Part shown: positions 5,214-49,098 of the stretch, piece after piece
Numbering within the stretch: the stretch's first letter is position 1
How the letters are laid out: the number at the start of each line of letters is the position of its first letter
Assembly (NCBI GenBank): GCA_047495785.1
Contig: JBLDXI010000012.1
Location: 1-64,000, forward strand
Source: Lepidodermella squamata
Taxonomy: Eukaryota > Animalia > Gastrotricha
Length of the DNA: 64,000 nt
Direction: 5' to 3'
Position numbers and translations under genes: made by a program
Notes under the pieces: model-generated
Told to the model about the DNA's origin: nothing
What the model saw: the letters and a program-made list of their open reading frames with translations, nothing else
Databases searched by the model: none

Positions 5214-5216
5214 GAC

Positions 5217-18635: not shown

Positions 18636-19034
18636 TCATTTATTTTTGTTCGAAACACCTCGGGCAAGTAATCGGTAATTTTCTTGATGAGTAACGGTAA
18701 TATTGAACCGTGGCTGGGTCCTTCGAACACCACTGGCCGTCGCAGATGAATGCGTGCGTCGAAAATGCTTCACCGTTTCCAACAATTTCTGCAGAGATAA
18801 TTCAGGTTTCGGCGTTGTAGTCGGTAGTCGGGCGAATAATTTTGAAGACCTAGCATTAGGCTCAGCTCGAAGTGCCACATTAAGCGGCTCTTCAATGTCA
18901 TCATCGGTTAGATTCAGCGATTCGCTGCTATCAGACGGCATCGCTGCGTCGTTGATATCAGCTAAAATCATGTAGCTTGAACTTGATCGGATAGCGGCGA
19001 GACAACATATTGCTAATAAAAATGGAGTCCTCAT
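18636..19034 (-). CDS. Secreted LxDIND-motif protein
   Basis: Signal peptide then YMILADINDA; C-terminal PRFNITVTHQENYRLL; TATA ~80 bp upstream. Confidence 0.8.
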   Translation of the reverse strand: MRTPFLLAICCLAAIRSSSSYMILADINDAAMPSDSSESLNLTDDDIEEPLNVALRAEPNARSSKLFARLPTTTPKPELSLQKLLETVKHFRRTHSSATASGVRRTQPRFNITVTHQENYRLLARGVSNKNK

Positions 19035-20483
19035 TATAGCAAAGCTGGGAAAAACCGAAATTGAACTTGTGACCCAAAAATCCTGGAAAATTCGAACTTC
19101 ACAGGTGGAGTTATATATTCGAAAAGCTATCACGGAAATTATTAAAAAAATCGAACGGACGGATAACAAACCACCCACTATTATTTCGTCTCAGGTATAT
19201 TGATGTAAAAATACACTAAGTTTGATTGGTTGAGGCTTTTAAATATATATTTTCAGACAAAAATATAGTGGCGCAGATCGGTTTCGAAACGCATTTTGCG
19301 TGAAAACAGGAAATGATTGATAATTTAATAAGTCTAAGAGCCAATTTTCGCCCTAAGACGCAACTGCTCCATGACTTCTAGCCGGTCGATTATGATTGAT
19401 TAGAGTAGTCTAGAAGCTATGAATTAAGGAAATAGGTCGTTTTTCGCAAGCCCATGCTGTGTTAAAGCACTGCTTGGAGCTTTAAAAATCAACAAATAAC
19501 TTAGGTTCTGGGCAAAATCGCACTTTCAAGGGTTCAAAATCAGCGCCGAAAATTGAAAATGATGACGAATTTATATCAAATGTATGATTACGAACTTGTA
19601 ACGAATCGCGGGAAATCCGTATGCTACCAAATGTACGTAGAATTTTCCCACGCGCGCAAAATTTTGAACTGATCGATTTTTTGCAAGCAAAAATTCAAAT
19701 AAAATAGCGGGAATATTCTACTTAACATCATAACTTTTTATCCTTTTTTAATATTTTAAAAATTTTAGGTAAGAGTTTTATTTGATTTTTAGCCAATTTG
19801 AAAAGTTTTGGCACAAAGATGGATAGTCATTTACTAATAGGTGATGGGTGTGCCGAGTGGACCCAATAAATTGTCGATTTAGCACTAAATTTGAGGCTTC
19901 AGGCTTGATTTTGACATGATGATTGTTTCGATTACCGAGAAAATTTTTCGGGACAGAAAATATGATAAGGTCAGATCATTTTTCCCACAGGTGAAAGTAT
20001 GAGCCTTACTCAGTTTCATTCGTAGAATATTTTGAACAAACAATTTTCAATTATCCGCCGCTGCTGGAACCCCTTAGTACGAATATCCACAACGTATTTT
20101 TTACTATACCTTGCCTAACCCATGGATCATAGATCGCACCATCACGTGTATTTTCAATATCAGCGATCAGTTTATGAGTTAAAATTCAGCATACACAGCC
20201 GATATCTCTTTCTTGTATTGATTTAACAAATCAGTGATTCCGATATCAGCAGTGCGACGTAAAATTCCGTAAATTTATTTACGAAGCTGAAGGTACCTAA
20301 CATGAAAAACCCGTGGATGTACTACATAATTATTGATCAAGGCTGAAATCACAAAGAATTGGAAACATCGAAAATTCTGGAACTTCTGAATTTTAGAGGT
20401 GCGTTATTTCTTGTTTATTTCCGAAGTTATTAGCTAAAGAAATATGATGAAAATTGATATACTAACATTTATCAAACACATCA

Positions 20484-20894
20484 TTACATGTTAGGTTTAA
20501 TAGCAGCCACCCTAGGCAGTAATTTGTAGCTTTCATTGCGAGTAATCTTGATGTTGAAACGCGGCTTTGGCTTCAATTTCGAACCCGAGTTGTAGTCGAG
20601 GACTACCGGCGCCATTGGCTGATTGGCGCCTTTACTCAACCGCCAAGAATTGTACATTTGCATGCCATTGCCTGCCATGATGCTGCCGGTTCGAGCCATC
20701 TGATTCGGGTAAAAAGCTGAACTGTCCAGCTGCTTATCTTGCTCTTCACTACTACCGTCAACATCAGGATTTTCCAAAGCCTCTTCATTCATGTCGGCTA
20801 GCATCATGTAACCCTGTGATACTTTGAAGAGGCCACTTATCAGCGAAATATTGATGACAATGAGAAGCTGGCAGAACTTTCCAGAGCTAGCCAT
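20484..20894 (-). CDS. Secreted LxDIND-motif protein
   Basis: Signal peptide then YMMLADMNEE; C-terminal PRFNIKITRNESYKLL, paralogous to 18636-19034. Confidence 0.8.
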   Translation of the reverse strand: MASSGKFCQLLIVINISLISGLFKVSQGYMMLADMNEEALENPDVDGSSEEQDKQLDSSAFYPNQMARTGSIMAGNGMQMYNSWRLSKGANQPMAPVVLDYNSGSKLKPKPRFNIKITRNESYKLLPRVAAIKPNM

Positions 20895-22810
20895 GCTGAA
20901 ATAATTTGTCGCTGAAAAATATGAAATCGCTATAGTTTTCGTCCCAATTATATAGGAACGTTCAATCAGTCCCTACGTCCTATTTAACCGTATTATCGGA
21001 AAAAATCTGGAAAATGCGGGTATATGACTCAAGTACGATTAAATCGAAGCGTGGCGGCTTTGCCGATGGCTTATCTCAGTTATTTGCTGATTCATAAAAA
21101 ATAATCCCCGCTTTGAAAAAACATGCTATTTTATTATACCGGAAAGTACACTGAATGAGAATTATTGCCACACCTATGACGCGGTAATTAAATAAATTAA
21201 AATCACTATCGCATTAATCTAAAACAACTAATGAGGGAAGATATCCACTTAATTGCTGCTTATGTAAGGATAATTGGGTTTGAGGTAGTTTCATGACCAA
21301 GTTCCGAGGAACATTGAAGAGCTATACGTTACATTCGCGCACAACTAAATCAAAGGTCCTTTACATTTCGATGGAATTTTGTGAAATTCTGTGCCATTTG
21401 CGCCAATGACGTTTATGCCAAGACATTTGCCCGAACGTTAACTGCGCTGAAAATGCCATTCCTACATGCGCATGGTAAAATTTAGCCATTGGGAAATTGA
21501 ATTTCTCTATAGCCCTCGATTCGTTTGGCTGCGCCAAACTTACCCGGGGTTCCAGATCGTGGGGGGGGGGGGGGGATTTTATTTCTCCATGGCTAGCCAT
21601 AGAGTATTCCCTTATTGTTTGTTTTTATTAGCCCGGTTTTTAGAGCAATGGTAAGTTGCGCGATAGCGACACTCGCATTTAGAAATCATATTCCAATTCC
21701 CTTTAAAGTTTCGAAACATTCCAGGGGCCGAACGTACCTTCATGAAGATTCTCAGGAATTTCCGATACAAAAAAATCAACCTCGGTTTATGGAACGAACC
21801 TCGGTTAAAGTATTTGAAAAGTGCATGTCGAAAATCCAAGTCTTTTTTATCATTTTTTGGCGTAATTTATCAACCTGCTGGTTCAACAGGAATATTAGCT
21901 TTCCTTATGAGAATTTTTCTTTACTTACACAGTAACACAGTAACATGAAGGTCCGAAACTAAGGAAAATTGTTCAAAAATTGCAAAAGTTACCCACTTTT
22001 TGTGTGGGTATTTTGGCCGGAGAAAAAAACCGATTTTTTGCGTCTAGATGACGGTAGCTGATCACTTTTCATACCGCAAATTGTACTCAAGAAAATCCTC
22101 GGTTAATTCTCTATAGATAAGTCGAAAAACCGAGGAATTCGATCCGCTCTATCCAAGTAAAAACGATCGGGACGAAGTGGGGTAATGTGGCCGGATGACT
22201 ATTTCACTCGAGAAAACTAGCGAAAACTAGGCCGATGATTCATCGCGGTCACTTTTGGATAACGCGCACATTTTAACGGAAACTTTATTCGACAAAATCG
22301 GTCAAGTTACCCCATAAAATTCAGGAAACTAAAGCTCTTTTGATTCCCGCGCAACAGATTTCAAAGTCCAAGGTATCGTTTGAAAGATGTTGTTGAGAGG
22401 AATCTTTGGGGGAGGAGGGACTAATTTGTCGTTAGGTTAAACAATTCCGAGATATAAACGCTCGAAATCTCGAGGCCCAAAATCGATGCGAAATAATTAC
22501 TAATTTTCGAATTCGGAAAAATGGAGGTTGTAGCATTGGTGCCAATTCCTGCCGTAAAACTAAATTGACATTTTGATAAGGCATGGAAAACCAAACTCGC
22601 CATGAAACTCTTCATCGCTATAATTATACAGTTCAGCATTCTATTCAAAACAGAAGCATGGCTATGATTATTTATTGTCTGCCGTCTGCCACCGTTTCAC
22701 CGGTCAAAGTGTGTTATTTACATATTAATAAGAAATGGTAGCTTCAGGTAAAAATTAAATTTGTTCAATTGACATTCTAGCGACGCGTAGCGCCCATCAT
22801 AGCCGACAAT

Positions 22811-23056
22811 TTAGGTCCTGCTTCGTTGTTGTAGGCGATGAGCCTGGTTGCCTGGTTGATGAAAACGCGCGTTGGCTCGTCCACTTTTCAGCATCAGCAG
22901 ACGCGCTCGAGATGACGCAGCTGCCGGTTGGTTCAGGCTGAGATCATCCTTCAGATCAGCCATCAGCTGGTAGGCACCAACCTCCGGTGTTGAAAACACG
23001 GCTAGCGAGGCGACTAAAACGAACAGGGCGCACAGCTTAACAATGGAACAGCTCAT
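22811..23056 (-). CDS. Secreted LxDIND-motif protein
   Basis: Signal peptide then YQLMADLKDD; basic C-terminus. Confidence 0.75.
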   Translation of the reverse strand: MSCSIVKLCALFVLVASLAVFSTPEVGAYQLMADLKDDLSLNQPAAASSRARLLMLKSGRANARFHQPGNQAHRLQQRSRT

Positions 23057-25003
23057 TTTTTGTGGGTATAAATTGCTTAAAAAACCTAGTATATCGAATT
23101 AAAAGGTGATAAAATAGTAAAACGCGGCAATTAATTTCCGAGGTCACGAGCATATAATGAGGCGGAAGGAAGGCGGATATTCCGCTTATAGCTCTCAGGG
23201 TGAGTTGCAAAATTTTAAACGCGCTTCTAGAGAAAAAAACATGGGCGATTGAACCATCGGCAAATCGTGCGGAAGAGGTGCGAAGAGAAAAAATTAGCCA
23301 AGAGGTTATTAGCCACGTGCGTCGTGCCAGCAGAATATAATTGAAGTTCGACCGCGCCTTGAGTTTGCGAGGGAGTTCGCTGGCCTGCTAATCAGAAACG
23401 TTTACAACACCGCGTCATCCAAGTTAGCGACAAAAAACGTGATAATTTATACAAATAATGACCCGTTAGTAAGTAAAGCAGTAACATGGCGTGGTGAATT
23501 AAAAATTATGAAAATCAAAATTCGGTGTGGGGGAAATAATATTTGTTGAATCACGGATTAAAATGAAGAAAAATGTTATTTCAGATGTTTACACCTCGAT
23601 ACTTGTTATGCATCAAAGAAAGTGTGTCAAAAAACAAGTAGGTAAATCTATTTTTCAAATTGACATGGGACAATCTGCTAATGGCAAAACAAGTTGTTTT
23701 CATATTTCATCGGCGTCAACTTGTTACTTCCGATAGAAAGCGCAGGATTTCCTGATATCGATTGACTTGCCAAGCCTTGAAGATCTTCAACGATGATCGA
23801 TTCCGTAAAAATTAATTCGGATTTTTGTCGCTATTTCTATCAATTATCCTCTGAAATGAGGTAATCATTACAAGAAATTGAGCGTATTTTTAGTTGAAGA
23901 TTAATATTTTCGTCACTCAGACGTTGACCTTGAAAATCCTCGTTGTTTGAATTTCGCACTCTTGTTCACACAAAAAATGGAAAAATTGTCGTTATTAACC
24001 GTGATGAAATTTTTTTTACGGGGCCAAAAAGGTGACTTGCAATATCGAAGCCACTCATGCGTGGCTAAAACTCTCGCAATCTTTCACCATTCAGCCGGGT
24101 TTCCATGATAAACCGCCGTCAGCTTTTTCAGCAGAAATAAATTATCGACAATTCAGTATTCTTTTTGGAAGACTTAAAAATTGTTGCTATGCCTACCTCA
24201 TTTTATTTGGAAAATTTCAAGTTCATTTCTGCCCTAAAAAACGCTCTGATAGAGATAATTTTTTCCAAATCTCATAACGGGTCACAGCCGATTTTTTTCC
24301 AGCACTGATGTTCAAAAAGATCGAAATCATTTAATCGTTAAAGTACAGGACTTAGAATTAAATTAAAATAAAGTGAAGAGCGCAAGCGCTTGAATGTCAA
24401 GTTCGGAAGTTCTGAGTGAAACCCGAGACAGAAGTATGACGATTTTCGTTCTTTTCGGGTGACAGGTGACACTCGTGTTAACCTGAGTGATATATTTGTC
24501 TGACGGCAAATCGTCAGGACCCATTTTCATCAAATTGTAGTGTTCCACTTTACGGCAGAATTATTTTATAAAAAAAAGTCGGAGCTTCGAAGTTTCCGTT
24601 CTCAAAAAAGCCGAAAACTTGCCGATTTTCGCGATGAGAATTTTCAGTCTTTCACCAAAGCTGCTGTTTACCGATCGGCGACTTCCGTCAAATCCCTGAA
24701 AAAAGACACGTCTATAGCGATTAATAACTCGACGATAGTGTGATCCATTTTATCGATAACCTGTCTGTTGCCTAAATACCTAAATCCCACGCATCCTCAC
24801 CATGCTCGTCATTCGAGTCATGTGCTCTACTAAGTTCGGCGAAAAAACCCGGAAAAAACGGAAGAGAACAGTTAATTATAATGTTCCACTGCATTATTTT
24901 TAGCTGAGGAGCCATTAACATCTAATTATCTAAGCTGTTTATGTCTGAGGAGTAACGAACTTGACTGCTATATACGCTTTAGATCACCTCAGTCTCGCTA
25001 AAA

Positions 25004-25393
25004 ATGAATTTGATTTTCCAACTTTTCCTTACTACGTTTGCTTTCGTTTACGCAGTTTCGGCTTTCGGTTCTTTGAACGACATTTCAGACGACATTGCAG
25101 CTAGCCGAAATTCTGCGGACGCGACGGACGACATCGACGGGGCGGTGCCCTATCGTGAGAATTGGGAATCGCTCAAAAATCTGCTCGCAACTGACCGGCG
25201 AGTTTACAAAATGGTTCAGAACTCGCTAGCCGATCAGCAGACGTTGATAAAACAACGGCGGCAGAAAGCTTTGAAAGAACTGCGCCAACGACTCAATTTA
25301 CATAACGCCACTTCACCGCATGGTAACCGGCGGCGAAAGTTGCGAAAGTTCGAATACGTTCAAATGGTGGAAGAAATAAATTTGCCCCACTGA
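25004..25393 (+). CDS. Secreted LxDIND-motif protein (FGSLND subfamily)
   Basis: Signal peptide, FGSLNDISDDIA, C-terminal RKLRKFEYVQMVEEIN. Confidence 0.85.
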   Translation: MNLIFQLFLTTFAFVYAVSAFGSLNDISDDIAASRNSADATDDIDGAVPYRENWESLKNLLATDRRVYKMVQNSLADQQTLIKQRRQKALKELRQRLNLHNATSPHGNRRRKLRKFEYVQMVEEINLPH

Positions 25394-27112
25394 ATCTTTA
25401 ACCTTATCCCATTGATTGGAAAATATTACGCTGGATCGGACATTTTTCAAAAGGATTAATAAAATTTTACGCAGGCTTAATTTTTATGGTTAATTCGTGA
25501 CTTTTTCTGAATTGTTTAATTTAATTTGAACTTCGGACTTGTTCAAGTCGTCGAAAAGTTCGCACTGTGGTATATTTTTCGGTTTCGGCCACTTTCAGCT
25601 TCGAGCCATGTGAATTCTTTTAGGCCTTTTTATAGGCGGCGATCTTATAGGCTAGAAAGCCCTCCTGTCGGAAATCGGCGGACCGAGCTGGAGTTTTTCA
25701 AAAAATTGGGTCAAATTCGTTGCAAGTGGGCCCAAGTCATAGCCTGGTTTAGGGAGATCCGGCGAAACTCGTCTCATAAACTCCACTTCCCCAATAGGGA
25801 TTAATACCCTGGTTAATATCGTTAGCGACGTTGAATAACTCGGATTTAGGCTTGTTTACCTCCGTTTCAAGGTGAGAGGTGACAAGTAAAAAGTCTTTTA
25901 TTTTTGCCTCTTCATTTACGCAAAAAGCCGCTTTTTACTCTACATATGTCATATGTAGAGTTCTGCTAAGGTCTCCTCTAGGATTGAAGATCATGATAAA
26001 TCTTTGCAAGAACGACTTGGAACTTGGATCTTTTATGATTGCACTTCATAAGGATCTTTGAAGAAATGAAAAAAGCAGGTCACTGAGGGCATTCACTTGA
26101 AATGAGGGTTATTTTCGAAGCCGTCCAGCAGTCGATAACGTCAGCCTTATCTGACGGAAAATGGCGCAAAGTTTAAAATTGCTCATAATTACATGTGACC
26201 TACTTTTTGCCAGTAGCTTTTTCTATTGCTATGATTCATTTCCAATTCTAAGGATTTGCGACAGGGACCAGTTTCGATTTTTCCCAATTATCGGCGATCA
26301 ACCGGGTGAAATTAGGAATTTTGCTCAAGGGAAAAAGAAGTTTCCCTTCCCAACAACCACCTTAAAACTGGCGAAAACAAGCTTGAGTCCGCCTTTTTCA
26401 AAGACGCTAACGATGTGGCACTCAGACATGGAAAAACTAGTTTTTTCCAGAATTGGAATTTCTTGATATACCCAACTCAAACCGACATGTTTTCACCTGA
26501 TTTTTAAAAACTGTGTAAGACAACAAATTAAGTACTATGTGCCTATTATTATACCTAATGCGAATATTTAGACAGTCGTTAGTCGTTAATGCAAATAATC
26601 GTAATTTAAATTACACTGACACATCATCGCATTATATGATTTGATGTCCTTTACCTGTTAACCCGGTCACTGTTGCTCCAACGAGACCTGAATGAGCCCA
26701 GACCCATACCGGTGATCTTTTCTACCTGTCGGTTTACACAACTCTGATGGCACTTGCAGGTCGGCTATATGTCTGGGTTCTCCGGATTTGATCTAATAGA
26801 CATTAGATTCTTATTCTCGGATTTCCCAATCTCGTGTTATACGAATCCTAGACGGAGACAACTGATTAGTGATGTACCAGACGAATATAGATCACGGATT
26901 TCATATACTCATCTCTTCATGTTGACTTTGTGTCCTTTCAGCCGAATTATTAGGGTAATAGCTTCGGTGACTTGAAATTTTATAATTGAATTAATTGAAT
27001 TAGAATTTTGTAACCCAAGGTTCGGAGATATATAGGCTGAGCAGATCATGATCTAATCATTTTCTGACGATTTAGAACCGAGTGAAGCTAAGTCTGTTTT
27101 TATCTGCATTTT

Positions 27113-27505
27113 ATGATGATCCTCTACTTGCCTATTCTATTCTCGACTTGCTTCTTCGCAAGCTCTGTCCTGTCATTCGGATCTCTCAGCGATATTTCAG
27201 ACGACATCGCCTTGAGTAAGGACCAAGAGGAACTTTCTCCAAGCGATAACGAGGAAACAGTTGTCCCTGCTCGCTTCAAATGGGACGCTATTCGAAACCT
27301 GAATCTAGCATCTGATCCCAAGGTCTACAAACTAGTGAAGCATGCCCTCGGCAACAAGCTCAAGCGTAGTCGACTGATAGCTCGAAGCAAACTTCGCGAG
27401 CAGTTTGGGCTGGGAAAATCTAACAAAATCACGACAACTCGACGACCTAAATTGCGAAAGTTCGAACGCGTGGAACAAGTCGCCGATATAAACATTGCAG
27501 CCTAA
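27113..27505 (+). CDS. Secreted LxDIND-motif protein (FGSLND subfamily)
   Basis: Signal peptide, FGSLSDISDDIA, KLRKFERVEQVADINIAA. Confidence 0.85.
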   Translation: MMILYLPILFSTCFFASSVLSFGSLSDISDDIALSKDQEELSPSDNEETVVPARFKWDAIRNLNLASDPKVYKLVKHALGNKLKRSRLIARSKLREQFGLGKSNKITTTRRPKLRKFERVEQVADINIAA

Positions 27506-28288
27506 AAATTTTGCCTAGAACTTGCGTTTTTAGTAACAAATAAAACAAAATGACCGTTAACCATTGGAAAGTTGGGTTTGGCGAATTTTCTAAATTTTCC
27601 ATTCATCAAACAATCAGCGATGTAAAAAATCACAGCAATAGTTACGGTACGGCGACAAAACAGCAACCTCGCAAAAGAGCGAATGCGACAAAACAGCAAC
27701 CTCGCAGAAGAGCGAATGCGACAAAACAGCAAATTTTTTATTAAGCGATAAAACAGCTAAAACTTACCATTAAAAGATGCATCGTATTTCTGCTGTTTTG
27801 CCGCAAGTTGAAAAATTTGCTGTTTTGTCGCGTTGGCTGTATTGGGTATTTGCTGTTATGACGGTCTGCCGGTCACTTTTGTTCCATTCAGACCTGACTC
27901 AGACCGGAACCATACCGGCGACTTGTTTTTCTACCTGCCGGCTTATACACAACTGGCACTTGCAGGTCCTGGATTCTCCGCATTCGATCTAGTCATATCC
28001 TCCCGACGACGATATGCTCCGATTTCCGAATCTCGTGCTACGAATCCTAGATGTAGACAAATTATTCGTGCTGTACCAGACAAATATAGAGCACGAATTT
28101 CACACTCATCTCTTCATCATGTTGGCGTGGTGTCCTTTCAGCGCATCTGTGTGAAGCCTTGATGATTCGAAATTCTATAATCTAGTAATTCAAGGGTCGG
28201 ATATACACTAAGCAGATGCGCATTTTCTGACAGTTTAAAACCGGCGAAACTAAGCCACAATTTGTCAGTATTTATCTGCGTTTTAAAG

Positions 28289-28678
28289 ATGATGATTTAC
28301 TTGCCTATAATTTTCTCGACTTGCTTCTTCGCAAGCTCTGTCTTGTCTTTCGGAGCTCTCAACGATATTTCAGATGACATCGCCTTGAGTAAGGACCAAG
28401 AGGAACTTTCTCCAAGCGACAGCGAGGAAACAGTTGTCCCAGTTCGCTACAATTGGGACGCTATCCGAAACCTGAATCTAGCCTCTGATCTCAAAATCTA
28501 CAAACTCGTACAGCAGGCCCTCGGCAGTAAGCTCAAGCTTGGTCGGCAACTGGCGCTAAGAAAACTTCGCCAGCAGTTGGGGCTTGGAAAATCTATCGAA
28601 AGCGCGGCACCTCGAAGACGCAAATTGCGAAAGTTCGAACGCGTGGAATACGTCGCCGATATAAACATTGCAGCCTAA
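28289..28678 (+). CDS. Secreted LxDIND-motif protein, tandem duplicate of 27113-27505
   Basis: Close paralogue; upstream DNA also duplicated (26660-27110 resembles 27865-28288). Confidence 0.85.
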   Translation: MMIYLPIIFSTCFFASSVLSFGALNDISDDIALSKDQEELSPSDSEETVVPVRYNWDAIRNLNLASDLKIYKLVQQALGSKLKLGRQLALRKLRQQLGLGKSIESAAPRRRKLRKFERVEYVADINIAA

Positions 28679-28718
28679 ACATTTCGCCTAGTAACTCAAA
28701 TAAAACAAATTAATAATA

Positions 28719-29995
28719 TCTCTCCATTGAGCACTTTTGCTCAATTGCACAACTTGTGCTCAAAATGCTCAATTCGTGCTCAATTCGTGCTCAATTTCTG
28801 CGCAATTTGTGCTCGACGGCGGTCTGAACCTATTGCAAGTGCTCAATTTGTGCGCAACAGCATAACAGGTTCTCATTAAGCACTCCGAAGATTACGAGGA
28901 TGAGTGTGAAGGCATTGGTTCGATTCCTGCTCGCGAAAAAAGCTATGAAACTGTGGCCACTGGTTCGCATCCCACCCGTCTCAATGATTTTTTTTTTAAT
29001 TTTTTTTTTAATTTTCCCAATTTTCGTTCAATGGCAAAGGGCTCAATGCGGATTCTGGCAATTTTTAGAACTGCCAAAGTTGCTAAATTGTCAACAAAAG
29101 AAATGAAATTATCGATAAGTTGATTTTTCAATGGAATAGATTTATGAGGAACCAGTGGCGCAATGGATTGCGGCTTTGAAGGCCTTGGCCACTGGTTCGA
29201 TTCCCACCCGCGACTGATTTTTTTCAAAATAAAATTAAGTCATTAGGGATCGGTGCTTAATGTGGTGCTCACGATCTGCTCAAAGGATGCTCGAAGAATG
29301 CTTTAAGCCGCGCAACGTGCTTGAAGAAAGGTCTCGATTCGTGCTCAATGTGCACAACGCTGCTTAAGGGAGCGCTCAACAGTGCTTAACGGAATGCTCA
29401 AAGATGCTCAGCAAAATTGAGCACAGGGTCGCGGTGGTGCACAACGAATGCTCGATTCCTGCTCGCGAAAAAAGCTATGAAACTGTGGCCACTGGTTCGC
29501 ATCCCACCCGTCTCAATGATTTTTTTTTTAATTTTTTTTTTAATTTTCCCAATTTTCGTTCAATGGCAAAGGGCTCAATGCGGATTCTGGCAATTTTTAG
29601 AACTGCCAAAGTTGCTAAATTGTCAACAAAAGAAATGAAATTATCGATAAGTTGATTTTTCAATGGAATAGATTTATGAGGAACCAGTGGCGCAATTGAT
29701 TGCGGCTTTGAAGGCCTTGGCCACTGGTTCGATTCCCACCCGCGACTGATTTTTTTCAAAATAAAATTAAGTCATTAGGGATCGGTGCTTAATGTGGTGC
29801 TCACGATCTGCTCAAAGGATGCTCGAAGAATGCTTTAAGCCGCGCAACGTGCTTGAAGAAAGGTCTCGATTCGTGCTCAATGTGCACAACGCTGCTTAAG
29901 GGAGCGCTCAACAGTGCTTAACGGAATGCTCAAAGATGCTCAGCAAAATTGAGCACAGGGTCGCGGTGGTGCACAACGAATGCTCAAAGGAGAGA
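28719..29995. mobile_element. Non-autonomous TIR element with internal 532-bp tandem duplication and tRNA-like boxes
   Basis: TIR TCTCTCCATTGAGCA / TGCTCAAAGGAGAGA flanked by TA; GTGCTCAA subterminal repeats; 28920-29451 nearly identical to 29452-29983. Confidence 0.75.
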
Positions 29996-31376: not shown

Positions 31377-31724
31377 ATGAAACTTAAGTCACCTTTGATT
31401 CATGCTGCAATTTTTTATGCAATTCTAGACGTCATTCTCGCGTTTGGTTCGCTCAATGACATCGCCGACGACATTGCGAACAGCCATCAGGAGAAGAGCC
31501 CCCAAGCCGATGGGTGGAGCATGGGCTCGATAATTCGGCAGATGAAAAACCCCAGCGTCTACAGAATCGTCGAGCAAAGCCTGGGCGAATTCGGCGATGA
31601 AAAAACGCGAGCAAAACTGCGCCGCATGAAGCAGAAAAGCAGCGATAAAAAATCGAAAAACGACAAAAAAATGAAAAAATTTCAGAAGGTTGAATATGTT
31701 GATGACATAAATATTAGTGATTAA
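31377..31724 (+). CDS. Secreted LxDIND-motif protein (FGSLND subfamily)
   Basis: Signal peptide, FGSLNDIADDIA, KMKKFQKVEYVDDINI. Confidence 0.85.
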   Translation: MKLKSPLIHAAIFYAILDVILAFGSLNDIADDIANSHQEKSPQADGWSMGSIIRQMKNPSVYRIVEQSLGEFGDEKTRAKLRRMKQKSSDKKSKNDKKMKKFQKVEYVDDINISD

Positions 31725-31832: not shown

Positions 31833-34800
31833 CTATTGCAAGACTGAGTTATCGTATCTTGACGTAGCGTCCTTGTCAACCGACTCGGAATTTTTAGCCA
31901 GAATATCGGCGATTATCGGATTTCCGCCCGAAATCAAGTAACTATTCACAAACAGCTTAGTCACCTTATCGGCTCCGTAGGTGAACAACAAATCAACGAT
32001 TTGGTAACTTTTCGCAACTTGAATAGCATTCATCATCGGAGTTTGGCCTTGATTATCAGGAATGTTAACGTAATCAGCCGCTGTATCGCCTAGAACTAAT
32101 TCACAAATATCATCCGACCCGCTGATTACGGCGTAGTTCAGAGCTGTACTTCCGTTAATATCTCGCCTAGCAAAAGTTTGATCAGCTCCATTGTCAACCA
32201 ATAACTTGACAACATCCGCATTTTGCCTGATAACTGCGATCATCAACGGTGTTTGCTTATTTCCGAATTCCTGCTGGAAAGCTGCATCAGCCCCTTTATC
32301 CAACAGCAGTGCTACGGCATCGGTATCGTTCCAAAACGCGGCCAACATCAGTGGGGAATAACCATTAGTAGCCTCGGTGACATTAGGCGAAGCTCCTCGA
32401 TCTAGGAATAGCTTCAGAACTCGATTCCTACTAGAGCTAGTGATGTTGCATTGCAGGGCTCGAATCAAAGCCGTGGCGTGGCTAACATTGACCAGGCAAC
32501 GGGTTAAATTGCGAGGGTCAGCCCAGTTAACATCCAAATCGGGATTTTGAGTCAGAAGTTGGCTGACAAACTTGAAGTCACCCTTAGCAGCCGAATCACC
32601 CAGTTGGCGCCCAACAGTTTCAGCATCACCCTGTAAAAAAATTGCTAAGTTATCATAAAACTACTTCACAGAACTTGAGCTTGGTAACAATTTTTGAGCT
32701 ACGGAGTGGATATTCGTACTTAAATTAAGAACGGGTTTTTTGACTATTCGAAGTTAGAAGGGGTTCCAGTAACGGATAATTAAAAATGTTTGCGTAAAAT
32801 ATTCTACGCTTGAAACTGCGGCCAACAACTGAATCTTGAGCTTCCCGACCTTTCTGAAAGGTTCCACTTACTTTCATCAGCTAAAAATGCATACACTGGA
32901 ATCGTTTTTTCAAACCAGTTGAAGTATGAGCCTTATACCTAGTTTCAAGCGTAGAATATTTTGTGCAAGAAATTTTCAATTATCCGCTACTGGAAGTACG
33001 AATAGACAAAAACGTTTACTTATTCAAGTGCGAACCGATCCTATTTTTTATATATTATTTTCATTTTTTGAACCTGAGGCAAGATGATAGCTGAACAATT
33101 GCTCGTCAATGATGACCAATTTCCGGATGATAAGCAGGTGAAGGTCGGAATTCCGGTGATTTGATAGCCAGGTTTACACGTAATTCGCCGGATTGTGCCA
33201 ACTTCGACTGGCCCGGGCTCAATGAACCCGTTATTCACAACTGGAAGCTTTGAATTCGAGCAAACTTTTCAGGAGAAAAGCAGGAAAAATAATTTAAACA
33301 AAATACCAATTATTTCTACTTACCTATTTTTTCGCAAAATATATTCAATGGCGACCAGGTGAAGTTAGCCAAGCATTTCAAAACTCCACCATTTGGCATA
33401 GCATAGCCCGGATTGCATTGAAGTTGCCTCGTCGCACCAACCGTGAAATCAACATTCGAGCTATCGAACCTTCCGTTCGTTATATTAGGAACAGGTCCAC
33501 AAGCTATTCACAATCTCAAGGCTTAAGACTGAACCTAGGGATATATCAAACTCACAGTTTCGAATACATTTGAAGTTGAGAAGTGGATCCCATTCTTCAG
33601 GCGAAATGCACATGCTTGTTGTGGCGGTGTCGTTTAGAGATTCTGAGAATCCGAAATTCGGCCTGCATCGAAATGTAACCCGTTTACCAACGTTTACACG
33701 ACTCATAGGAGCTAATGGGGTTCCTAGGTCAGAATCCGAGGCAGAACCGTTGCTGAACTCTGGCACGGTGCACTAGATTAGAAAAATTAAAAAAAATCGA
33801 TAAAGAAATTAGAGAAATAAGCTCACAATAGGTGGAAGCCGGGTTCGGGTATCAGCCTGGGTCCAATTTCCCATAATTTCCCGAATCCATGGGAGAGCTT
33901 CGCAAACTCGGGCATAAACCCCCGGCCATCCACTTCCGCACGGCATTTGGCCGAAAGAGACTACCCCAATCACGTGGACCCGGCCATTTTTTTCGCACAT
34001 CAAAGGCGCGCCACTGTCTCCACCGCAAGTATCAGGGTTGCTACTGCCACTAGAAATCGGACCAGCGCAAACGTGGATCCTCGTCAAGTTCGAGTATGCG
34101 CCATTCCCCATGCAGTCAGATCTTGAATAAATTCTTAGGTCGATCTTTTTCAGCGTAGAATTGGCCGCATTCCCCCAACCAGCGGCTGAGACTAAGCCAC
34201 AGCCATCTATCGTGTCAGAATCGCCCCCGATCGCTGCATCCCTTTCGCATTGCAAGGCGTTACTCGCGTTTCCAGATGGTAAACATACCGGCCGGACAAA
34301 TTCGTTGATTGTAGCCCGATCGTCAAGTTTTATGAGGGCGTAGTCGTAATATTGCCCCGATTGAGTTTTGAAGTACTGCTTATGAACGAACACGTCCGAC
34401 ATTGATGGGTAGCGTTTTTGCATCCCTTCAGGATTTCGACTGCCGAAATTGCTTACTCCTAGGGTGACTGTGATGCTGAAAAGAAAAATAATATTTTTAA
34501 CCTGAATTTGGACACTTTGAGCCTGAATTGTACAAAACTGATACAAAGCGGCAAATTTCCCTGAAAAATAGCTCGGCTTTCCAGCGGTACAAAATTTTCC
34601 AAAACTTTCCAAAATCACGAGAAAAATTGCGCAACAGCGAATAAAATTTGCGTAAGGTCTAATTAGCATATGCAAATGAGGTGTTTTAATTTGGGGCCTT
34701 ATGTCCAAATTTAGAGAGGCTTCTTCACCTATTTCTTAAAAATTAGGATGAGCTCTGAAATTTCTCAAAATTTACCAGTCGATCAAGAATCTTCGCCCCA

Positions 34801-38893: not shown

Positions 38894-39181
38894 ATGATTT
38901 CTAAGTCAATTTCCTTCATCCTCGCCTTGATTTTACTCGACGTCGGAGTAGCTAGCAGCTATCAAGTGCTATTCGACATCAACGATTTGATTCTGAAACA
39001 AACATCGCCATATAATTCTGCTATCCTGATGAACAAACCTAAGCCGAAAACGGAGGCACGAAAATTGCTGGACGAATTTGTTCGCGATAATGGCCGGACG
39101 CGGGCTGCTGTTCGCCGACTCGTTGGACCTAAAATCGAGAGAATGGCCGACACGAAAGCAGGAAAAGATGGTTTCTATTGA
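38894..39181 (+). CDS. Secreted LxDIND-motif protein
   Basis: Signal peptide then YQVLFDINDL; TATA at ~38795. Confidence 0.8.
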   Translation: MISKSISFILALILLDVGVASSYQVLFDINDLILKQTSPYNSAILMNKPKPKTEARKLLDEFVRDNGRTRAAVRRLVGPKIERMADTKAGKDGFY

Positions 39182-42856: not shown

Positions 42857-43195
42857 TTAGTGGAACCAAATTTACGGTGAGCGGAACCAAATATGCTGTA
42901 GCGGAACCAAATATGCTGTTAGCGGAACCAAATTTTAGACTTTTCTAGTGGTTTGAAATCGATTTTCGGATATTTATTGCAGGTCAAGATTGGCCACAAT
43001 AATTCTAGAAAATTCAACAATGAATGAAGCGCAACATCCTCTATAAGACGCAGTGTTCAGTTCAAAATTCGTAGAAATATTCTAAAAATGACCTTTGGCA
43101 TATTTCGACTTTGGTTCCGCAAAAAGCAAATTTGGTTCCGCTACAGCATATTTGGTTCCGCTCACCGTAAATTTGGTTCCGCTAAAAGATATTCC
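42857..43195. mobile_element. Second copy of the AGCGGAACCAAAT inverted-repeat element
   Basis: Reverse-complement similarity to 40660-40995. Confidence 0.75.
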
Positions 43196-43266
43196 GATTT
43201 GATGCCCTTTCAAGATCAATGAACGAGGTGTTAGTAACGCGCTAAACGAGTGCTCGAAAAGTGTCG

Positions 43267-43342
43267 TATGTACCCGGGGAATTGAACCCGGGCAGCCTTT
43301 CTGAGAAGGCACGGCAACCTTTGAGCCACCATGGCCGACACT
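43267..43342 (-). other. tRNA-derived (SINE-like) fragment
   Basis: A-box-like TGGCTCAAAGG and B-box GGTTCAATTCC on the minus strand; no complete cloverleaf. Confidence 0.4.
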
Positions 43343-44617: not shown

Positions 44618-45037
44618 ATGATTCGAACACTCTTTGGTATGCTGGTCATTGCCATGCTCATCTGCTGCATCACAGGCATTGCAGTTCTGCGCGACATCAA
44701 CGACGAGATCATTGAACAAATCAATGAAGAACGCGACAACGAAAACCTGCGCATTTTATCATCCGAAAAAACTGATCTACCCAGCCTGGAGGCGAAAGTC
44801 AACTTGATCGGAAATCTGCGGCGACGCCTCAAGGTCGAGCTCAAGGGCCGTATCGCTGAACTGCTGAAGGCGCCGAGTACTGAGAGTAAGATCCTGAAAA
44901 AACTGATGGCGAGCCGTCTTCAAAAATTGGAAGCTGACGGCGTCCGAAGATCGCCATTTTCTCGGGCTCAAATACGAAAAATTGTGGTCATCAACGATTT
45001 GCCGGATCTAGAATTACCCGCCGATGCGCGTAATTAG
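44618..45037 (+). CDS. Secreted LxDIND-motif protein
   Basis: Signal peptide then IAVLRDINDE; helical middle with ES.IL.K shared with 46124; C-terminal IRKIVVINDL; TATA ~44533. Confidence 0.82.
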   Translation: MIRTLFGMLVIAMLICCITGIAVLRDINDEIIEQINEERDNENLRILSSEKTDLPSLEAKVNLIGNLRRRLKVELKGRIAELLKAPSTESKILKKLMASRLQKLEADGVRRSPFSRAQIRKIVVINDLPDLELPADARN

Positions 45038-46123
45038 TCTATTCGAATGAACTTTTAGCAGAAATATTATAGTCAAAATATTTTTTTCTGCTATACATTT
45101 ACGGCTCGATGCCTGTTGTTACAACTTGTATAGAAACCGCAAAGTAATAAAACATGTTTTTTTTTTATTTGACCTTTATCGAATGAAAAATGGGTTTTGC
45201 GAAATTATTGACATGAGGAGAGTTGCATTTAATCTTAAATACCGCAGCTCAGGATATATTTGGACCGGGTAATTTTGGACTCTTCCGTTTTGCAGTTTTA
45301 CAGTGTTTGTTGCATACAATTTTCCGTCTCTTGAGCTTCTGAATAGCGCAAGTCTCAAGGCGATTGGAGCAATATTTGATTGTTAAGAAATTTATAAGCA
45401 AGGCAGCTCAAATGTCGATTTTGGACCCCCTCTTATCTCCCAAAGAAATGATCATTTTGGGAAGGAAATTGGTAGGCGTTGCTCTATCAGTTATCGAAAG
45501 AAATATCAAGAGTCAAAGATTGATTTTCGCATGGCATTCACTTGAATGCGCGAAGATGCGCGAAAATGTAATTTTCTCAATTTTTTCGAAAAGCAAATGA
45601 TTCGCCATCTGTTCATCATTTTTTCCAAATTCGACCCGAAGCTCAGAAAAAACTGGTCCAACTTCAGCCAAAAATATCTTCGGTCGCCAAAAATCAGGTA
45701 AAAATCGTAAAATCACTACATTTCACCGATAAATCGGAGCTCACCTTAATACACACGTTTGTACCAAAAACAATCGATTTCTGGAACTGATTTTTAATAA
45801 TCGAAAAACATGGTATTGTCTATTGTGTAAAATTACACTCCCTTTTACGGTATTCAATTTGCAAGTAAGGCATGCTGAGGTGAGGAATTTTGCCAGAAAA
45901 TTCGCTGAGCCCCACATTTCACTTGTCAACAGTCATGTAAGATTTTAGGATAGCAGGTTGAAGATGTTATCCGCCTTCGCTTCCGCCGCAGCCGCCGATA
46001 ATCATCTTGCGTTTTCACCCCGGCCAAAATCACACTCATCCATGCGTTAAATTGAATCAAGCCGTCCTTAAATACTCAAATTCAAATTGAAAGGTCACGC
46101 ATTTCTAGAACTAAGGTTAAAAG

Positions 46124-46525
46124 ATGCAGATGAGCTATATCTTAGCATTAGCATTCTGTTTGCTATTAGGCCAGCCAAACGGTGTGGCTTCAATGGGATT
46201 TCTCGCCGATTTAAATGCTGACACCGTTGACTACAGCTACGACATGCCGCCAGCTAATGACGAAGATAGCCCGTTACCTGTCGAGGAATACAGGGCCCTC
46301 CTTCCGCACAATCTTCACAAGCAAATGCGGAAAGACATAATGGGCCGAATGAATGAATTATCTCAAGTCACGGGCCTTGAGTCGGAGATCTTGGACAAAT
46401 ATCTGAAATCAGCCATTGCTAAGAAAAAGGTCGAAGCCCTGGAACTACGTAAAGCGCAACGGGCTGCCATGCGGAAAACTCAATCAGTCAGCCATGATCA
46501 GCCTTCAGCCAATTTGAACGCTTGA
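46124..46525 (+). CDS. Secreted LxDIND-motif protein
   Basis: Signal peptide then MGFLADLNAD; GRMNEL...ESEILDK resembles GRIAEL...ESKILKK of 44618. Confidence 0.8.
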   Translation: MQMSYILALAFCLLLGQPNGVASMGFLADLNADTVDYSYDMPPANDEDSPLPVEEYRALLPHNLHKQMRKDIMGRMNELSQVTGLESEILDKYLKSAIAKKKVEALELRKAQRAAMRKTQSVSHDQPSANLNA

Positions 46526-46611
46526 AAAACTGAACACCCGATGATTTTTATTATTGCTTAAAACTGTTTAAAATAAATCAGGATAAAATGTCAAAGATTT
46601 CGTGGGATTTT

Positions 46612-46827
46612 CTAGCGACGTCCGTAGCCAGCTCGATCCTGGGCGAAGAGTCTCATAGCAACAGCTGGCTTCAAGGCATCTTCACCGTCAGCATCAGCGT
46701 CTCCATAACCATCATCCTCGGCAGCATCTCCCAACAACGACGTCAGAGAATAGGCAGAAGCCTGATGCATTGCCATCAAGGCGATCAGGGCAAAAATTGC
46801 GAAAATTGCGAAGTTTTTCATGGCCAT
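46612..46827 (-). CDS. Small secreted peptide precursor
   Basis: Signal peptide, acidic spacer, C-terminal Y-GRR (amidation signal). Confidence 0.75.
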   Translation of the reverse strand: MAMKNFAIFAIFALIALMAMHQASAYSLTSLLGDAAEDDGYGDADADGEDALKPAVAMRLFAQDRAGYGRR

Positions 46828-47091
46828 GATAAAGGTTTCTTTAACTGCAGAATATGTTATGAAAAATGCTTGTTAGTGCAAGGTAAATAAACCGTCGAGA
46901 GTGTTCGTCTGCGAGCGAACTTGTAATTACAGGAAATCGATTTAATTTCTTCTTGAGAGACCCCCGATTTATTCTACAATACAACTTTAAATTAAAAGAA
47001 GAAAAAAACAAACGCCTACTGGCGTAATATTTTATCGTATAGATCAAACAGTCATTAAAACTATACTATACACTAGATTTTGTTATTTTTT

Positions 47092-47325
47092 TCACTTGCG
47101 AAATATGCGGAGGAAGCCTTGCGGCTTGTGGGGCGATTTCATCGTGTTTTGCTTGAAAATTTGAAATGGCGGCTCGTTGCTGCTCAGATCAGCTATCACG
47201 TATCGCCGAGGAGGCTCGATGACGTTGTTGTAGTTCATGTTGAACCGGTTCGGTGAGTAAACGGCCGTGCTGGTGGCCAACATAGCCAGACCGACAATGA
47301 GAAGAAAGGCGAGAGCTCGCGACAT
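47092..47325 (-). CDS. Small secreted protein
   Basis: Signal peptide; internal RR-YVIADLS; ends FLRIFRK. Confidence 0.75.
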   Translation of the reverse strand: MSRALAFLLIVGLAMLATSTAVYSPNRFNMNYNNVIEPPRRYVIADLSSNEPPFQIFKQNTMKSPHKPQGFLRIFRK

Positions 47326-47610
47326 CAGGATTTAAACAAAAATTCGAGTGAGATAAAATTAATTGCGGAAAAATCTGGTTTAAACTGAAAGAAATAGCCG
47401 CTTCGGATACTTATAAATATTGGCAAACCCCAAACTCTATTTATTTGCACGGGCCGAATAATCCTTCTTTGCGGGGTAGAAATTTACTCTGGACCATTTT
47501 TTCTTGTTTTAGAGCGTTAAAATTTATTTAATGATAAGTGTACCACGCATTTTATTGCTTTCAAGTTTGATTTATAAACAATGAATAATTACTAGAGGCT
47601 ATTATGATAT

Positions 47611-47796
47611 TTAACCAACGGTCAGTCTTGCGTGCGGAATGTTGACCTTCCACAAGCCGGAATCTGTTTTCATAATTCGCCAATGTTGATCCAGGGCCGG
47701 GTTGAAATTCAATCGCATTCTTCGCGGCACTACAGCCAAGCCAGTGGCGAACATCGCAACGAGAATGCTGATAAAAAATGGCAGAAAAAGCTTCAT
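47611..47796 (-). CDS. Small secreted peptide (WRxxK...WxVNxP pair)
   Basis: Signal peptide; WRIMKTDSGLWKVNIP. Confidence 0.72.
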   Translation of the reverse strand: MKLFLPFFISILVAMFATGLAVVPRRMRLNFNPALDQHWRIMKTDSGLWKVNIPHARLTVG

Positions 47797-48228
47797 TATT
47801 TCTCAAGAAATTTTTCCATGAGTTTCGATGCTCAAAAAATAACAAAAATTCAGAAAATTATGGCTGTTAATGAAATGATGACGTCTGGGAAGCCAGCCAA
47901 CGAGGTGATTTATCGACCTCGTGATCCCACGCGTCATTCAAATAACATTTTGTTTGCTGATCGGCGATTTACCTTGGAGACGCCCCGTTGTTTCGCATTA
48001 TTTGTAAAAAAATTAATTGCTTAGGATTTCAGCGATCGATGGACTGTGGTCAGCTATAATTCTTAGGAAGCCTTTATAATAGATTTCCTAACTATAGAAT
48101 CCTGTAAAAATATGCCATGGGATTAAATACAAGTGATTCACCACTGTCTACATTATTTTATTCGAGTGTAAATCAAATTTTATAGGCGAATAATTTTTCT
48201 TGTCATTTTTTGTGACAATGCTGACATG

Positions 48229-48480
48229 TCACGCCTGCGTGAACTTTGAAATGTACGGTGAGTTGACGTGCCAAACTTCGTTATTGGCTTTGACCATCCT
48301 CCAATCATCATGGTCTGCTTTGCGAGCAGGCTTAGCTAGGTTAAGCTGTCCTGTTGGTATCAGCCCGCTTTGTTTGCCGTGCCCGCCATCTGATCGAAAT
48401 CGCCGATACGCTTGGCTGATTTCAGCGAACATAACCAGGAATAACAGGCAATAAAATGTTACGGATTTTTCCATTGTCAT
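48229..48480 (-). CDS. Small secreted peptide (WRxxK...WxVNxP pair)
   Basis: Signal peptide; WRMVKANNEVWHVNSP. Confidence 0.72.
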   Translation of the reverse strand: MTMEKSVTFYCLLFLVMFAEISQAYRRFRSDGGHGKQSGLIPTGQLNLAKPARKADHDDWRMVKANNEVWHVNSPYISKFTQA

Positions 48481-48651
48481 AAAAATGAGAAAAAATTTCG
48501 CTTTACTAACGCTATTCAAATAATTCAATGGGACGTTTTACCAGCTATTATTTATTTATACTAAATAGAAAAACTTAATATATTTTGCCAGCAAAAAACA
48601 ACAATTAAATTACTAACATATTGCTGCCAAAATTGTCGCTTAAAGCGCACT

Positions 48652-49098
48652 TTAATTAGGAATGTTCGCCACATCGAAAGCGTCGACTACGACGATTTTC
48701 GGCGACCAAATCGATTTCACCTTGGGCGCCTTGGGCAAGCGGAGAGCGGAAATTAAGCTGGACCACTTGCCGCCGTTATTTCCATCCTGCTTGGCCGCAT
48801 CACTTATCGTCTCGTCGGCGATTTTAGCGACCTGATTTGCGTTTTGTTTCTGGTTGAGTATGTTGTTCCTAATTTCAGCATTCAGGCGATTTTTCACTGC
48901 CTTGCTCACTGCGTAGAACTTGGAGTAGGGGTATCGGCTGACTGCTGATTCTTCAAGCGCCTGTCCATCATCGTTGTAATCTTCGTTGTAGGAACGCAAG
49001 TTTTCGGCTTCATCGTTGAGGTCAGTCAGAATGCCGAAAGCCTCGATGCCTTGCACGAGTGCCAAGATAGAGTAAACGATAAAACTAAAGGATTGCAT
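48652..49098 (-). CDS. Secreted LxDIND-motif protein
   Basis: Signal peptide then FGILTDLNDE; C-terminal PKIVVVDAF. Confidence 0.82.
   Translation of the reverse strand: MQSFSFIVYSILALVQGIEAFGILTDLNDEAENLRSYNEDYNDDGQALEESAVSRYPYSKFYAVSKAVKNRLNAEIRNNILNQKQNANQVAKIADETISDAAKQDGNNGGKWSSLISALRLPKAPKVKSIWSPKIVVVDAFDVANIPN

What the first reader, a model, noticed from the sequence alone, without database searches (positions are those of the whole stretch)
18636..49098. Conserved motif directly after the signal peptide in 11 otherwise divergent proteins
Seen, predicted mature N-termini: YMILADIND, YMMLADMNE, YQLMADLKD, FGSLNDISD, FGSLSDISD, FGALNDISD, FGSLNDIAD, YQVLFDIND, IAVLRDIND, MGFLADLNA, FGILTDLND. 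Asp is invariant at +6 with hydrophobic residues at +1, +4 and +7, while downstream sequence diverges between subfamilies. Established analogy: RxLR and PEXEL are positional N-terminal motifs on diverse effectors. Inference: an undescribed sorting, processing or receptor-binding signal.
Basis: partly seen in the sequence, partly recalled or inferred. Interest (0 to 1): 0.85.

Follow-up and report, generated by a model that had tools for sequence, protein, structure and literature searches.

The report
Conserved N-terminal motif, orphan secreted family
Eleven small intronless genes clustered in an unidentified animal genome encode secreted proteins whose only sequence shared across subfamilies is an 11-residue acidic and hydrophobic block right after the signal peptide; the block is real and selected at the protein level, probably a common sorting or docking handle, but its function is untested.

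Summary
All 11 motif instances exist at the stated places, each directly after a 20-28 aa signal-peptide-like N-terminus with a (-3,-1)-compatible cleavage site. The post-hoc regex occurs 11 times against 0.06 in shuffles. In leave-one-group-out tests the 11-residue block alone ranks every left-out member above about 39,000 other positions. With signal peptide and motif removed, no subfamily is detectable from the others. Synonymous codons vary at the conserved L4 and D6, so selection acts on the protein. The genes look real: g5/g6 dN/dS is 0.42, allelic pN/pS is 0.14 (P=1e-4), an allelic indel stays in frame, and 10 of 11 have AATAAA after the stop. All share one plan: signal peptide, motif helix, acidic disordered linker, Pro, long basic helix, basic tail. 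No relatives appeared in Pfam, PDB, 5.8 billion protein clusters, 1.84 billion representatives or JGI metagenome contigs. Other signal-peptide ORFs in the window lack the motif, so it is a family signature, not a general secretome code. The best reading (about 0.4) is a shared handle within an anionic N-terminal region, working like prohormone N-terminal sorting helices. It fails the definitions of ER-ESCAPE, cnidarian propart, RxLR/PEXEL and the cadherin calcium motif. Function and expression are untested. Earlier notes of this scan did not report this motif elsewhere.

The parts
18636..19034 (-). g1: intronless gene, 132 aa, subfamily A. Motif YMILADINDAA at 18942-18974.
20484..20894 (-). 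g2: 136 aa, subfamily A. Motif YMMLADMNEEA at 20778-20810. C-terminal PRFNI..T block shared with g1.
22811..23056 (-). g3: short member, 81 aa. Motif YQLMADLKDDL at 22940-22972. It lacks the C-terminal block and may be truncated.
25004..25393 (+). g4: 129 aa, subfamily B. Motif FGSLNDISDDI at 25064-25096. Folded with AF2. Allelic variants are mostly synonymous, and a 9-nt deletion at 25295 stays in frame.
27113..27505 (+). g5: 130 aa, subfamily B. Motif FGSLSDISDDI at 27176-27208.
28289..28678 (+). g6: 129 aa, subfamily B, recent duplicate of g5 (77% identity, dN/dS 0.42). Motif FGALNDISDDI at 28349-28381.
31377..31724 (+). g7: 115 aa, subfamily B. Motif FGSLNDIADDI at 31443-31475.
38894..39181 (+). 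g8: short member, 95 aa. Motif YQVLFDINDLI at 38960-38992.
44618..45037 (+). g9: 139 aa counted from the Met that gives a 20-aa signal peptide. Motif IAVLRDINDEI at 44678-44710.
46124..46525 (+). g10: 133 aa. Motif MGFLADLNADT at 46193-46225. This is the weakest motif match.
48652..49098 (-). g11: 148 aa. Motif FGILTDLNDEA at 49006-49038. Folded with AF2: helix 2-18, disordered 19-37, helix 38-87.

Best explanation
The finding is a tandem cluster of 11 intronless genes of a lineage-restricted family of small (81-148 aa), Cys-free (mature part) secreted proteins. They share one plan: a signal peptide that is not conserved in sequence; then the 11-residue block Phi-x-x-L-x-D-Phi-(N/S)-D-(D/E)-Phi, which opens a short predicted helix; then a strongly acidic disordered linker (first 30 residues net -6 to -9 in 9 of 11); then a conserved Pro capping a long basic helix; then a basic tail. 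Shown: the block is the only part conserved across subfamilies, and it is kept by selection on the protein. Inferred: the block is a common handle within an anionic N-terminal region. It would be a charged helix with a hydrophobic face (positions 1, 4, 7, 11), exposed once the signal peptide is removed. One shared cellular partner would recognise it, most likely during sorting or condensation into a regulated secretory organelle or during processing, while the basic helical remainder has diversified in each paralog. It would work like the N-terminal sorting helices of prosomatostatin and proCART, or like the conserved pro-regions of toxin and antimicrobial-peptide precursors, without being a sequence member of any of them.
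For: The motif is real and cross-validated. The rest of the protein is not detectably homologous between groups. The first 11 columns have mean BLOSUM62 1.89 and identity 0.37, against 0.11 and 0.15 for the rest. Synonymous codons vary at conserved sites: L4 uses 5 codons, and D6 is GAC in 6 genes and GAT in 5. Charge polarity is consistent: acidic head and basic body. AF2 on two distant members gives the same plan: g4 has helix 3-17, disordered 18-29, then helices; g11 has helix 2-18, disordered 19-37, helix 38-87. The genes are real and constrained: dN/dS 0.42; 11 synonymous against 5 nonsynonymous allelic SNPs, pN/pS 0.14, P=1.3e-4, with an in-frame indel; AATAAA after the stop in 10 of 11 and a TATA-like box upstream in about 6. 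For precedents, an N-terminal amphipathic helix is necessary and sufficient for sorting of proCART, and the same is cited for prosomatostatin; a hydrophobic patch in a charged helix suffices for granule targeting (PMC3602189 and the references cited there). As a weak lead, the nearest language-model neighbours of g6 are prohormone-type precursors, all scoring under 0.9.
Against: There are no expression, localisation or N-terminal protein data. Helix confidence over the motif is only moderate (pLDDT about 61-73), and pTM is 0.30-0.33. Amphipathicity is not significant against shuffles for most members (P 0.02-0.64). Dibasic sites are absent in g2, g3 and g11, and no cleavage site is conserved at the acidic/basic boundary, so removal of a pro-region is not supported. 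Allelic data show constraint along the whole mature protein (2 nonsynonymous against 11 synonymous), which fits a functional full-length protein as well. The organism, tissue and any granule type are unknown.
Confidence: 0.4

Rival explanations
1. The block is the conserved functional epitope of the mature extracellular protein, for example the end that engages a common receptor, co-receptor or matrix or ion partner. It would have no role in trafficking. The variable basic helices would give each paralog its specificity.
For: Each paralog is constrained along its whole mature length (pN/pS 0.14), and no conserved pro-region cleavage site exists. That fits proteins acting full-length. The pattern of constant end plus variable body is seen.
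Against: No receptor or partner is known. The block sits in a strongly acidic segment that is otherwise disordered, which is more typical of pro-regions than of binding cores. Nothing here discriminates this from the best explanation.
Confidence: 0.3
2. The acidic N-terminal helix and linker act as an intramolecular mask and chaperone for the cationic helix, as in precursors of antimicrobial or cytolytic peptides. The motif would be the contact that docks the head onto the basic helix until release.
For: The first 30 residues carry net charge -6 to -9 in 9 of 11 members, and the rest +4 to +15. Long basic helices are predicted. Unchecked notes on this genome report other precursor families with an acidic propeptide.
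Against: AF2 gives no confident packing of head on body (pTM 0.30-0.33). The boundary has no conserved cleavage site, and three members lack dibasic sites. Signal peptides are not conserved between subfamilies as they are in classical AMP cassettes. Net charge of the whole protein is modest (-2 to +7).
Confidence: 0.15
3. The exposed N-terminus is an ER-export signal read by a Surf4/Erv29-type cargo receptor (ER-ESCAPE-like). It would keep these charged, aggregation-prone proteins at low concentration in the ER.
For: The position is right, at the first residues after signal-peptide removal, with a large hydrophobic residue at +1 in 11 of 11. Acidic secreted proteins are typical Surf4 clients (PMC6097701).
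Against: ER-ESCAPE is limited to three residues, and Pro at position 2 is the main determinant. Here position 2 is G, M, Q or A and never Pro. Gln, present in 2 of 11, is described as disfavoured (PMC6097701). The best-conserved residues (L4, D6, Phi7, D9) lie outside the tripeptide.
Confidence: 0.08
4. The finding is an artefact: chance ORFs or pseudogenes, with a motif produced by post-hoc pattern picking or by DNA-level conservation such as a repeat or gene conversion.
For: The regex was derived from the instances themselves. No RNA evidence exists. g3 and g8 are short and may be decayed.
Against: The motif passes leave-one-group-out validation. Synonymous sites vary within it. There is an excess of synonymous polymorphism and an in-frame indel, dN/dS of 0.42, and polyA signals and TATA-like boxes.
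Confidence: 0.03

Closest known systems
N-terminal amphipathic alpha-helix sorting signals of prohormones (prosomatostatin, proCART; hydrophobic patch in a charged helix)
   Same: A short conserved helix close to the signal-peptide cleavage site, mixing acidic and Leu/Ile residues, on small secreted precursors. It is conserved while other parts vary (PMC3602189 and the references cited there).
   Different: There is no sequence relationship. Amphipathicity here is statistically weak. Dibasic processing sites are not conserved. Sorting has not been tested. This family has 11 tandem paralogs rather than single-copy hormone genes.
ER-ESCAPE amino-terminal tripeptide read by Surf4/Erv29p
   Same: A positional signal exposed by signal-peptide removal, with a hydrophobic first residue and acidic cargo (PMC6097701).
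   Different: ER-ESCAPE is only three residues long and favours Phi-P-Phi. Here no member has Pro at position 2, and the invariant residues are at +4 and +6, with I/L/M at +7.
[quoted passage not shown] 2000, as cited in PMC10305222)
   Same: A conserved, negatively charged segment directly after the signal peptide on different secreted proteins, proposed to act in sorting.
   Different: That propart is 9-17 residues long and ends in Lys-Arg. Here no dibasic site occurs before residue 34 in any member. It is not known whether this organism is a cnidarian.
Conserved prepro cassettes with hypervariable mature regions (conotoxin superfamilies, amphibian antimicrobial-peptide precursors); comparison from general knowledge
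   Same: Tandem, fast-diverging secreted gene families with a constant N-terminal part, an acidic pro-region and a basic remainder.
   Different: In those families the signal peptide itself is the most conserved element and a dibasic site marks the boundary. Here the signal peptides have diverged between subfamilies, only the 11 post-cleavage residues persist, and there is no conserved boundary site.
RxLR and PEXEL host-targeting motifs
   Same: Short positional N-terminal motifs on secreted proteins whose remaining sequence diverges.
   Different: Those motifs are Arg-based, lie downstream of the cleavage site, and belong to pathogen effectors. Here the motif is acidic and hydrophobic, starts at +1, occurs in an animal genome, and sits on a single paralogous family.

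Membership tests
ER-ESCAPE (Surf4/Erv29p) motif | Located at the first three residues after signal-peptide cleavage | tested here: inconclusive
   The predicted cleavage, by the (-3,-1) rule only, places the motif at +1 in 11 of 11. No experimental N-termini are available, and alternative sites exist.
ER-ESCAPE (Surf4/Erv29p) motif | Phi-P-Phi tripeptide with Pro at position 2; Gln and acidic residues disfavoured | tested here: not met
   Position 2 is G (5), M (2), Q (2) or A (1) in 10 of 11 plus G in g10, and never Pro. Rules taken from PMC6097701.
Cnidarian toxin and nematocyst propart motif | Propart of 9-17 residues after the signal peptide, ending in Lys-Arg | tested here: not met
   The earliest dibasic site is at mature residue 34, and three members have none. 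Definition as cited in PMC10305222.
Prohormone N-terminal amphipathic sorting helix (proSST/proCART type) | Alpha-helix near the N-terminus of the pro-protein | tested here: met
   AF2 predicts helix 3-17 in g4 and helix 2-18 in g11, with moderate confidence (pLDDT about 61-73).
Prohormone N-terminal amphipathic sorting helix (proSST/proCART type) | Clear amphipathicity with a hydrophobic face needed for sorting | tested here: inconclusive
   The hydrophobic moment at 100 degrees is 0.17-0.50. It exceeds shuffles only for subfamily B (P 0.02-0.07), and the others give P 0.15-0.64.
Prohormone N-terminal amphipathic sorting helix (proSST/proCART type) | Directs cargo to regulated secretory granules | not testable with these tools
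   This needs cell biology. No RNA runs were found for tissue assignment.
Anionic-propiece / cationic-peptide precursors (AMP-like cassette) | Signal peptide, then an acidic propiece, then a cationic C-terminal part | tested here: met
   The first 30 residues carry net charge -6 to -9 in 9 of 11, and the remainder +4 to +15.
Anionic-propiece / cationic-peptide precursors (AMP-like cassette) | Conserved signal peptide, and a dibasic cleavage site at the propiece/peptide boundary | tested here: not met
   Signal peptides have no conserved column except Met. There is no conserved dibasic site, and g2, g3 and g11 have none.
RxLR / PEXEL host-targeting signals | RxLR or RxLxE/Q/D consensus located downstream of the signal-peptide cleavage site in pathogen effectors | tested here: not met
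   No Arg is conserved in the block, the motif begins at +1, and the window carries animal genes (GPCR, trypsin, ankyrin).
Cadherin calcium-binding linker motif (PROSITE-type [LIV]-x-[LIV]-x-D-x-N-D-[NH]-x-P, recalled from memory) | Full pattern, including [LIV] at D-4, [NH] after ND, and Pro | tested here: not met
   By direct reading of the 11 blocks, the residue at D-4 is G, M, Q or A, and no member has the N/H-x-P continuation. Only L-x-D-Phi-N-D is shared in some members.

The most novel reading that the evidence does not exclude
The 11-residue block is a transferable zip code of a new type. Exposed at the new N-terminus after signal-peptide cleavage, it would be read by a dedicated receptor or processing enzyme that routes or matures a whole battery of fast-evolving secreted proteins in a specialised secretory cell of a poorly sampled animal lineage. 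That would make it an animal counterpart, of independent origin, to the positional effector motifs of pathogens.
Probability: 0.25. Interest if true: 0.7.

Novelty: new variant of a known kind. Interest (0 to 1): 0.45.

Why it matters
Tandem, lineage-restricted secreted families are common, but their constant parts are usually the signal peptide or a Cys framework. Here the signal peptides and nearly all of the mature sequence have diverged beyond detection, while 11 residues right after the predicted cleavage site persist under amino-acid-level selection. That isolates a very small candidate recognition element, short enough to test directly by peptide pull-down or point-mutant reporters. If it proves to be a sorting or processing signal, it would give a handle on how this animal routes a battery of orphan secreted proteins, and a search pattern for finding the rest of that battery. 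If it is only the family's binding epitope, the finding is an ordinary orphan gene family.

Tried and rejected
- **Homology searches, all blank.** These covered Pfam on all 11 members and word-indexed searches with one member and with the alignment. They also covered the exhaustive profile search of 1.84 billion representatives, PDB sequences (best E 0.37) and JGI metagenome contigs. The 11-member alignment was too divergent to seed that last scan.
- **ESM Atlas.** It returned only sub-threshold neighbours for g6 and nothing for g9.
- **Organism identification failed.** Run names are coded. The neighbouring trypsin ORF gave one unnamed 34% hit. The Polinton integrase matched only virus-type clusters. 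There were no Rfam matches and no tRNAs.
- **Expression could not be assessed.** No RNA runs were found, and the only holder is a DNA run.
- **Shared promoter motif.** Only TATA-type hexamers are enriched, and only marginally after correction. A TCATGT/AGTCAT word about 130-195 nt upstream in 5-6 genes is not significant.
- **Similarity between the N-terminal block and the C-terminal 'V-x-D-I-N-I' tail.** Rejected, because the C-terminal positions did not score above background with the motif PSSM.
- **Cadherin-type calcium motif.** Rejected by direct reading of the 11 blocks.
- **The acidic-propeptide 'E-x-R' code noted elsewhere in this genome.** It is not consistently present before the conserved basic residue in this family, by direct reading.
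- **The 'invariant Pro'.** Its position varies from mature residue 17 to 41, so it may be partly an alignment product. Even so, both AF2 models place it at the N-cap of the long helix.
- **Fold searches.** Not run, because both models are non-compact helices with pTM around 0.3 and would give meaningless matches.


Full report
**What is there.** The window is animal DNA of about 40% GC with low ORF density. It carries a two-exon rhodopsin-type GPCR, a trypsin-domain ORF and ankyrin repeats. A Polinton/Maverick-type element with a chromodomain integrase lies at about 537-7737. Between 18.6 and 49.1 kb lie eleven small ORFs (g1-g11, 81-148 aa). They begin with Met plus a hydrophobic segment and end at a stop within the same ORF.

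**Is it more than chance?**
- The regex derived from the instances occurs 11 times, against a mean of 0.06 in shuffles. That test is circular, so I cross-validated.
- A position-specific matrix of 11 residues was built from six of the seven sequence groups and used to score all stop-to-stop ORFs of the window (about 39,000 positions). It ranks every left-out member above every non-family position.
- The converse test removes the signal peptide and the first 12 mature residues. An HMM of the other groups then fails to detect any left-out group (E 0.57-91, within background).
- BLAST links only g4-g7 to one another, and g1 to g2 through a C-terminal block.
- Between groups, the first 11 mature columns have mean BLOSUM62 1.89 and identity 0.37, against 0.11 and 0.15 for the rest.
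- The constraint acts on the protein. Leu4 is written with five different codons, and Asp6 is GAC in six genes and GAT in five.

**Are these genes?** No RNA run could be found, and the only public holder (X1) covers genes and spacers evenly, so it is DNA. It does carry a different allele. In g4 and g6 there are 11 synonymous and 5 nonsynonymous differences, three of the latter in the signal peptide. That gives pN/pS 0.14, binomial P=1.3e-4, or P=4.6e-6 for the mature parts alone. A 9-nt deletion in g4 stays in frame. The recent duplicates g5 and g6 have dN/dS 0.42, and most other pairs are saturated or incalculable at synonymous sites. Ten of 11 genes have AATAAA 20-135 nt after the stop, and about six have a TATA-like box 35-108 nt before the ATG. 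I conclude they are real, old, intronless paralogs under purifying selection.

**Shared architecture.**
- The mature proteins are Cys-free.
- The first 30 residues carry net charge -6 to -9 in nine of eleven members, and the remainder +4 to +15.
- AF2 on two members from different groups gives the same non-compact plan (pTM 0.30-0.33). g4 has helix 3-17, disordered 18-29 and helices 30-76. g11 has helix 2-18, disordered 19-37 and helix 38-87. In both, the conserved Pro sits at the start of the long helix.
- A basic C-terminal block, (K/R)-(K/R)-Phi...V...N-(I/L), is visible in most members. It does not make the groups statistically detectable.

The carriers are therefore best read as diverged paralogs of one family. 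The window's other 15-20 signal-peptide-like ORFs, mostly at 46.6-61.8 kb, lack the motif. It is a family signature rather than a general secretome code, at least within this window.

**Relatives.** None were found anywhere:
- Pfam;
- PDB sequences;
- 5.8 billion protein clusters, searched with one member and with the alignment;
- an exhaustive profile search of 1.84 billion representatives;
- JGI metagenome contigs.

Language-model neighbours are sub-threshold and generic: small secreted or prohormone-type precursors. The organism could not be identified.

**How it most likely works.**
- *Shown:* a short block at the predicted new N-terminus is the only element conserved across an old, fast-diverging secreted family. 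It is predicted, with moderate confidence, to begin a helix inside a strongly acidic head that precedes a basic helical body.
- *Inferred (about 0.4):* it is a common handle read by one cellular partner during sorting or condensation into a regulated secretory organelle, or during processing. It would act in the manner of the N-terminal helices of prosomatostatin and proCART, where a hydrophobic face in a charged helix is necessary and sufficient for granule targeting (PMC3602189 and the references cited there).
- *Against:* amphipathicity is weak for most members. No pro-region cleavage site is conserved, and three members lack dibasic sites. Allelic constraint covers the whole mature protein.

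These points keep a rival at about 0.3: the block may be the constant binding epitope of a full-length extracellular protein. An intramolecular acidic mask for the basic helix is rated about 0.15. A Surf4-type ER-export signal is rated about 0.08. It fits the position but not the defining Phi-P-Phi rule, and it would not explain conservation at +4 to +9 (PMC6097701).

**Comparison with known motifs.** Each of the following fails at least one defining feature that was tested here (see the membership table):
- ER-ESCAPE;
- the cnidarian propart, 9-17 residues ending in KR (PMC10305222, citing Anderluh 2000);
- RxLR and PEXEL;
- the cadherin calcium-binding pattern.

The general phenomenon is well known: a constant N-terminal part with a hypervariable remainder in tandem secreted families. 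The unusual feature here is that the signal peptide has diverged while only the 11 post-cleavage residues persist.

**Verdict.** I rate it a new variant of a known kind, with moderate interest. Earlier notes of this scan list many other secreted-peptide clusters in this genome, some with acidic propeptides, but none reporting this motif.

Noticed in passing
window 537-7737 (- strand ORFs): A Polinton/Maverick-like element. The 403-aa integrase has rve and chromo domains (Pfam), and its nearest Atlas clusters are Preplasmiviricota-type. A neighbouring ORF at 5651-6430 looks TBP-like by eye only. The element was also flagged by another first-stage note.
   Followed up: partly
window 46612-61756, both strands: About a dozen further small ORFs with signal-peptide-like N-termini and no motif. 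The ORF at 46612-46827(-) has an acidic middle and ends in GYGRR, an amidation-type end. The ORFs at 57784-58161(+) and 59038-59454(+) share a GHP..R C-terminal end. Several start with Tyr after the predicted cleavage site. The region looks like a larger island of secreted-peptide genes.
   Followed up: partly
window 25787-25927, 27620-27901, 28607-28888: Short stretches between family genes have contig word depth of about 49,000, about 5,200 and 470-940 in run X1, against a baseline of about 65. These are high-copy dispersed repeats, possibly MITE-like, interleaved with the gene cluster.
   Followed up: no
window 24800-29000: Run X1 carries a divergent allele, about 2% different in both genes and spacers. 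It includes an in-frame 9-nt deletion in g4 at 25295 and small insertions just upstream of the g6 start codon (behind 28277 and 28287).
   Followed up: yes
window 10006-12261 (+): A two-exon rhodopsin-family GPCR (weak 7tm_1 and Srw-type Pfam hits) lies 6 kb upstream of the cluster. A trypsin-domain ORF (33809-34708, -) with ankyrin ORFs (31833-32537, -) interrupts the cluster between g7 and g8.
   Followed up: partly
upstream regions of g4, g5, g6, g9, g10 (about -130 to -195 from the ATG): A shared TCATGT/AGTCAT word sits at similar distances upstream of five to six family genes. It is not significant after multiple-test correction.
   Followed up: partly
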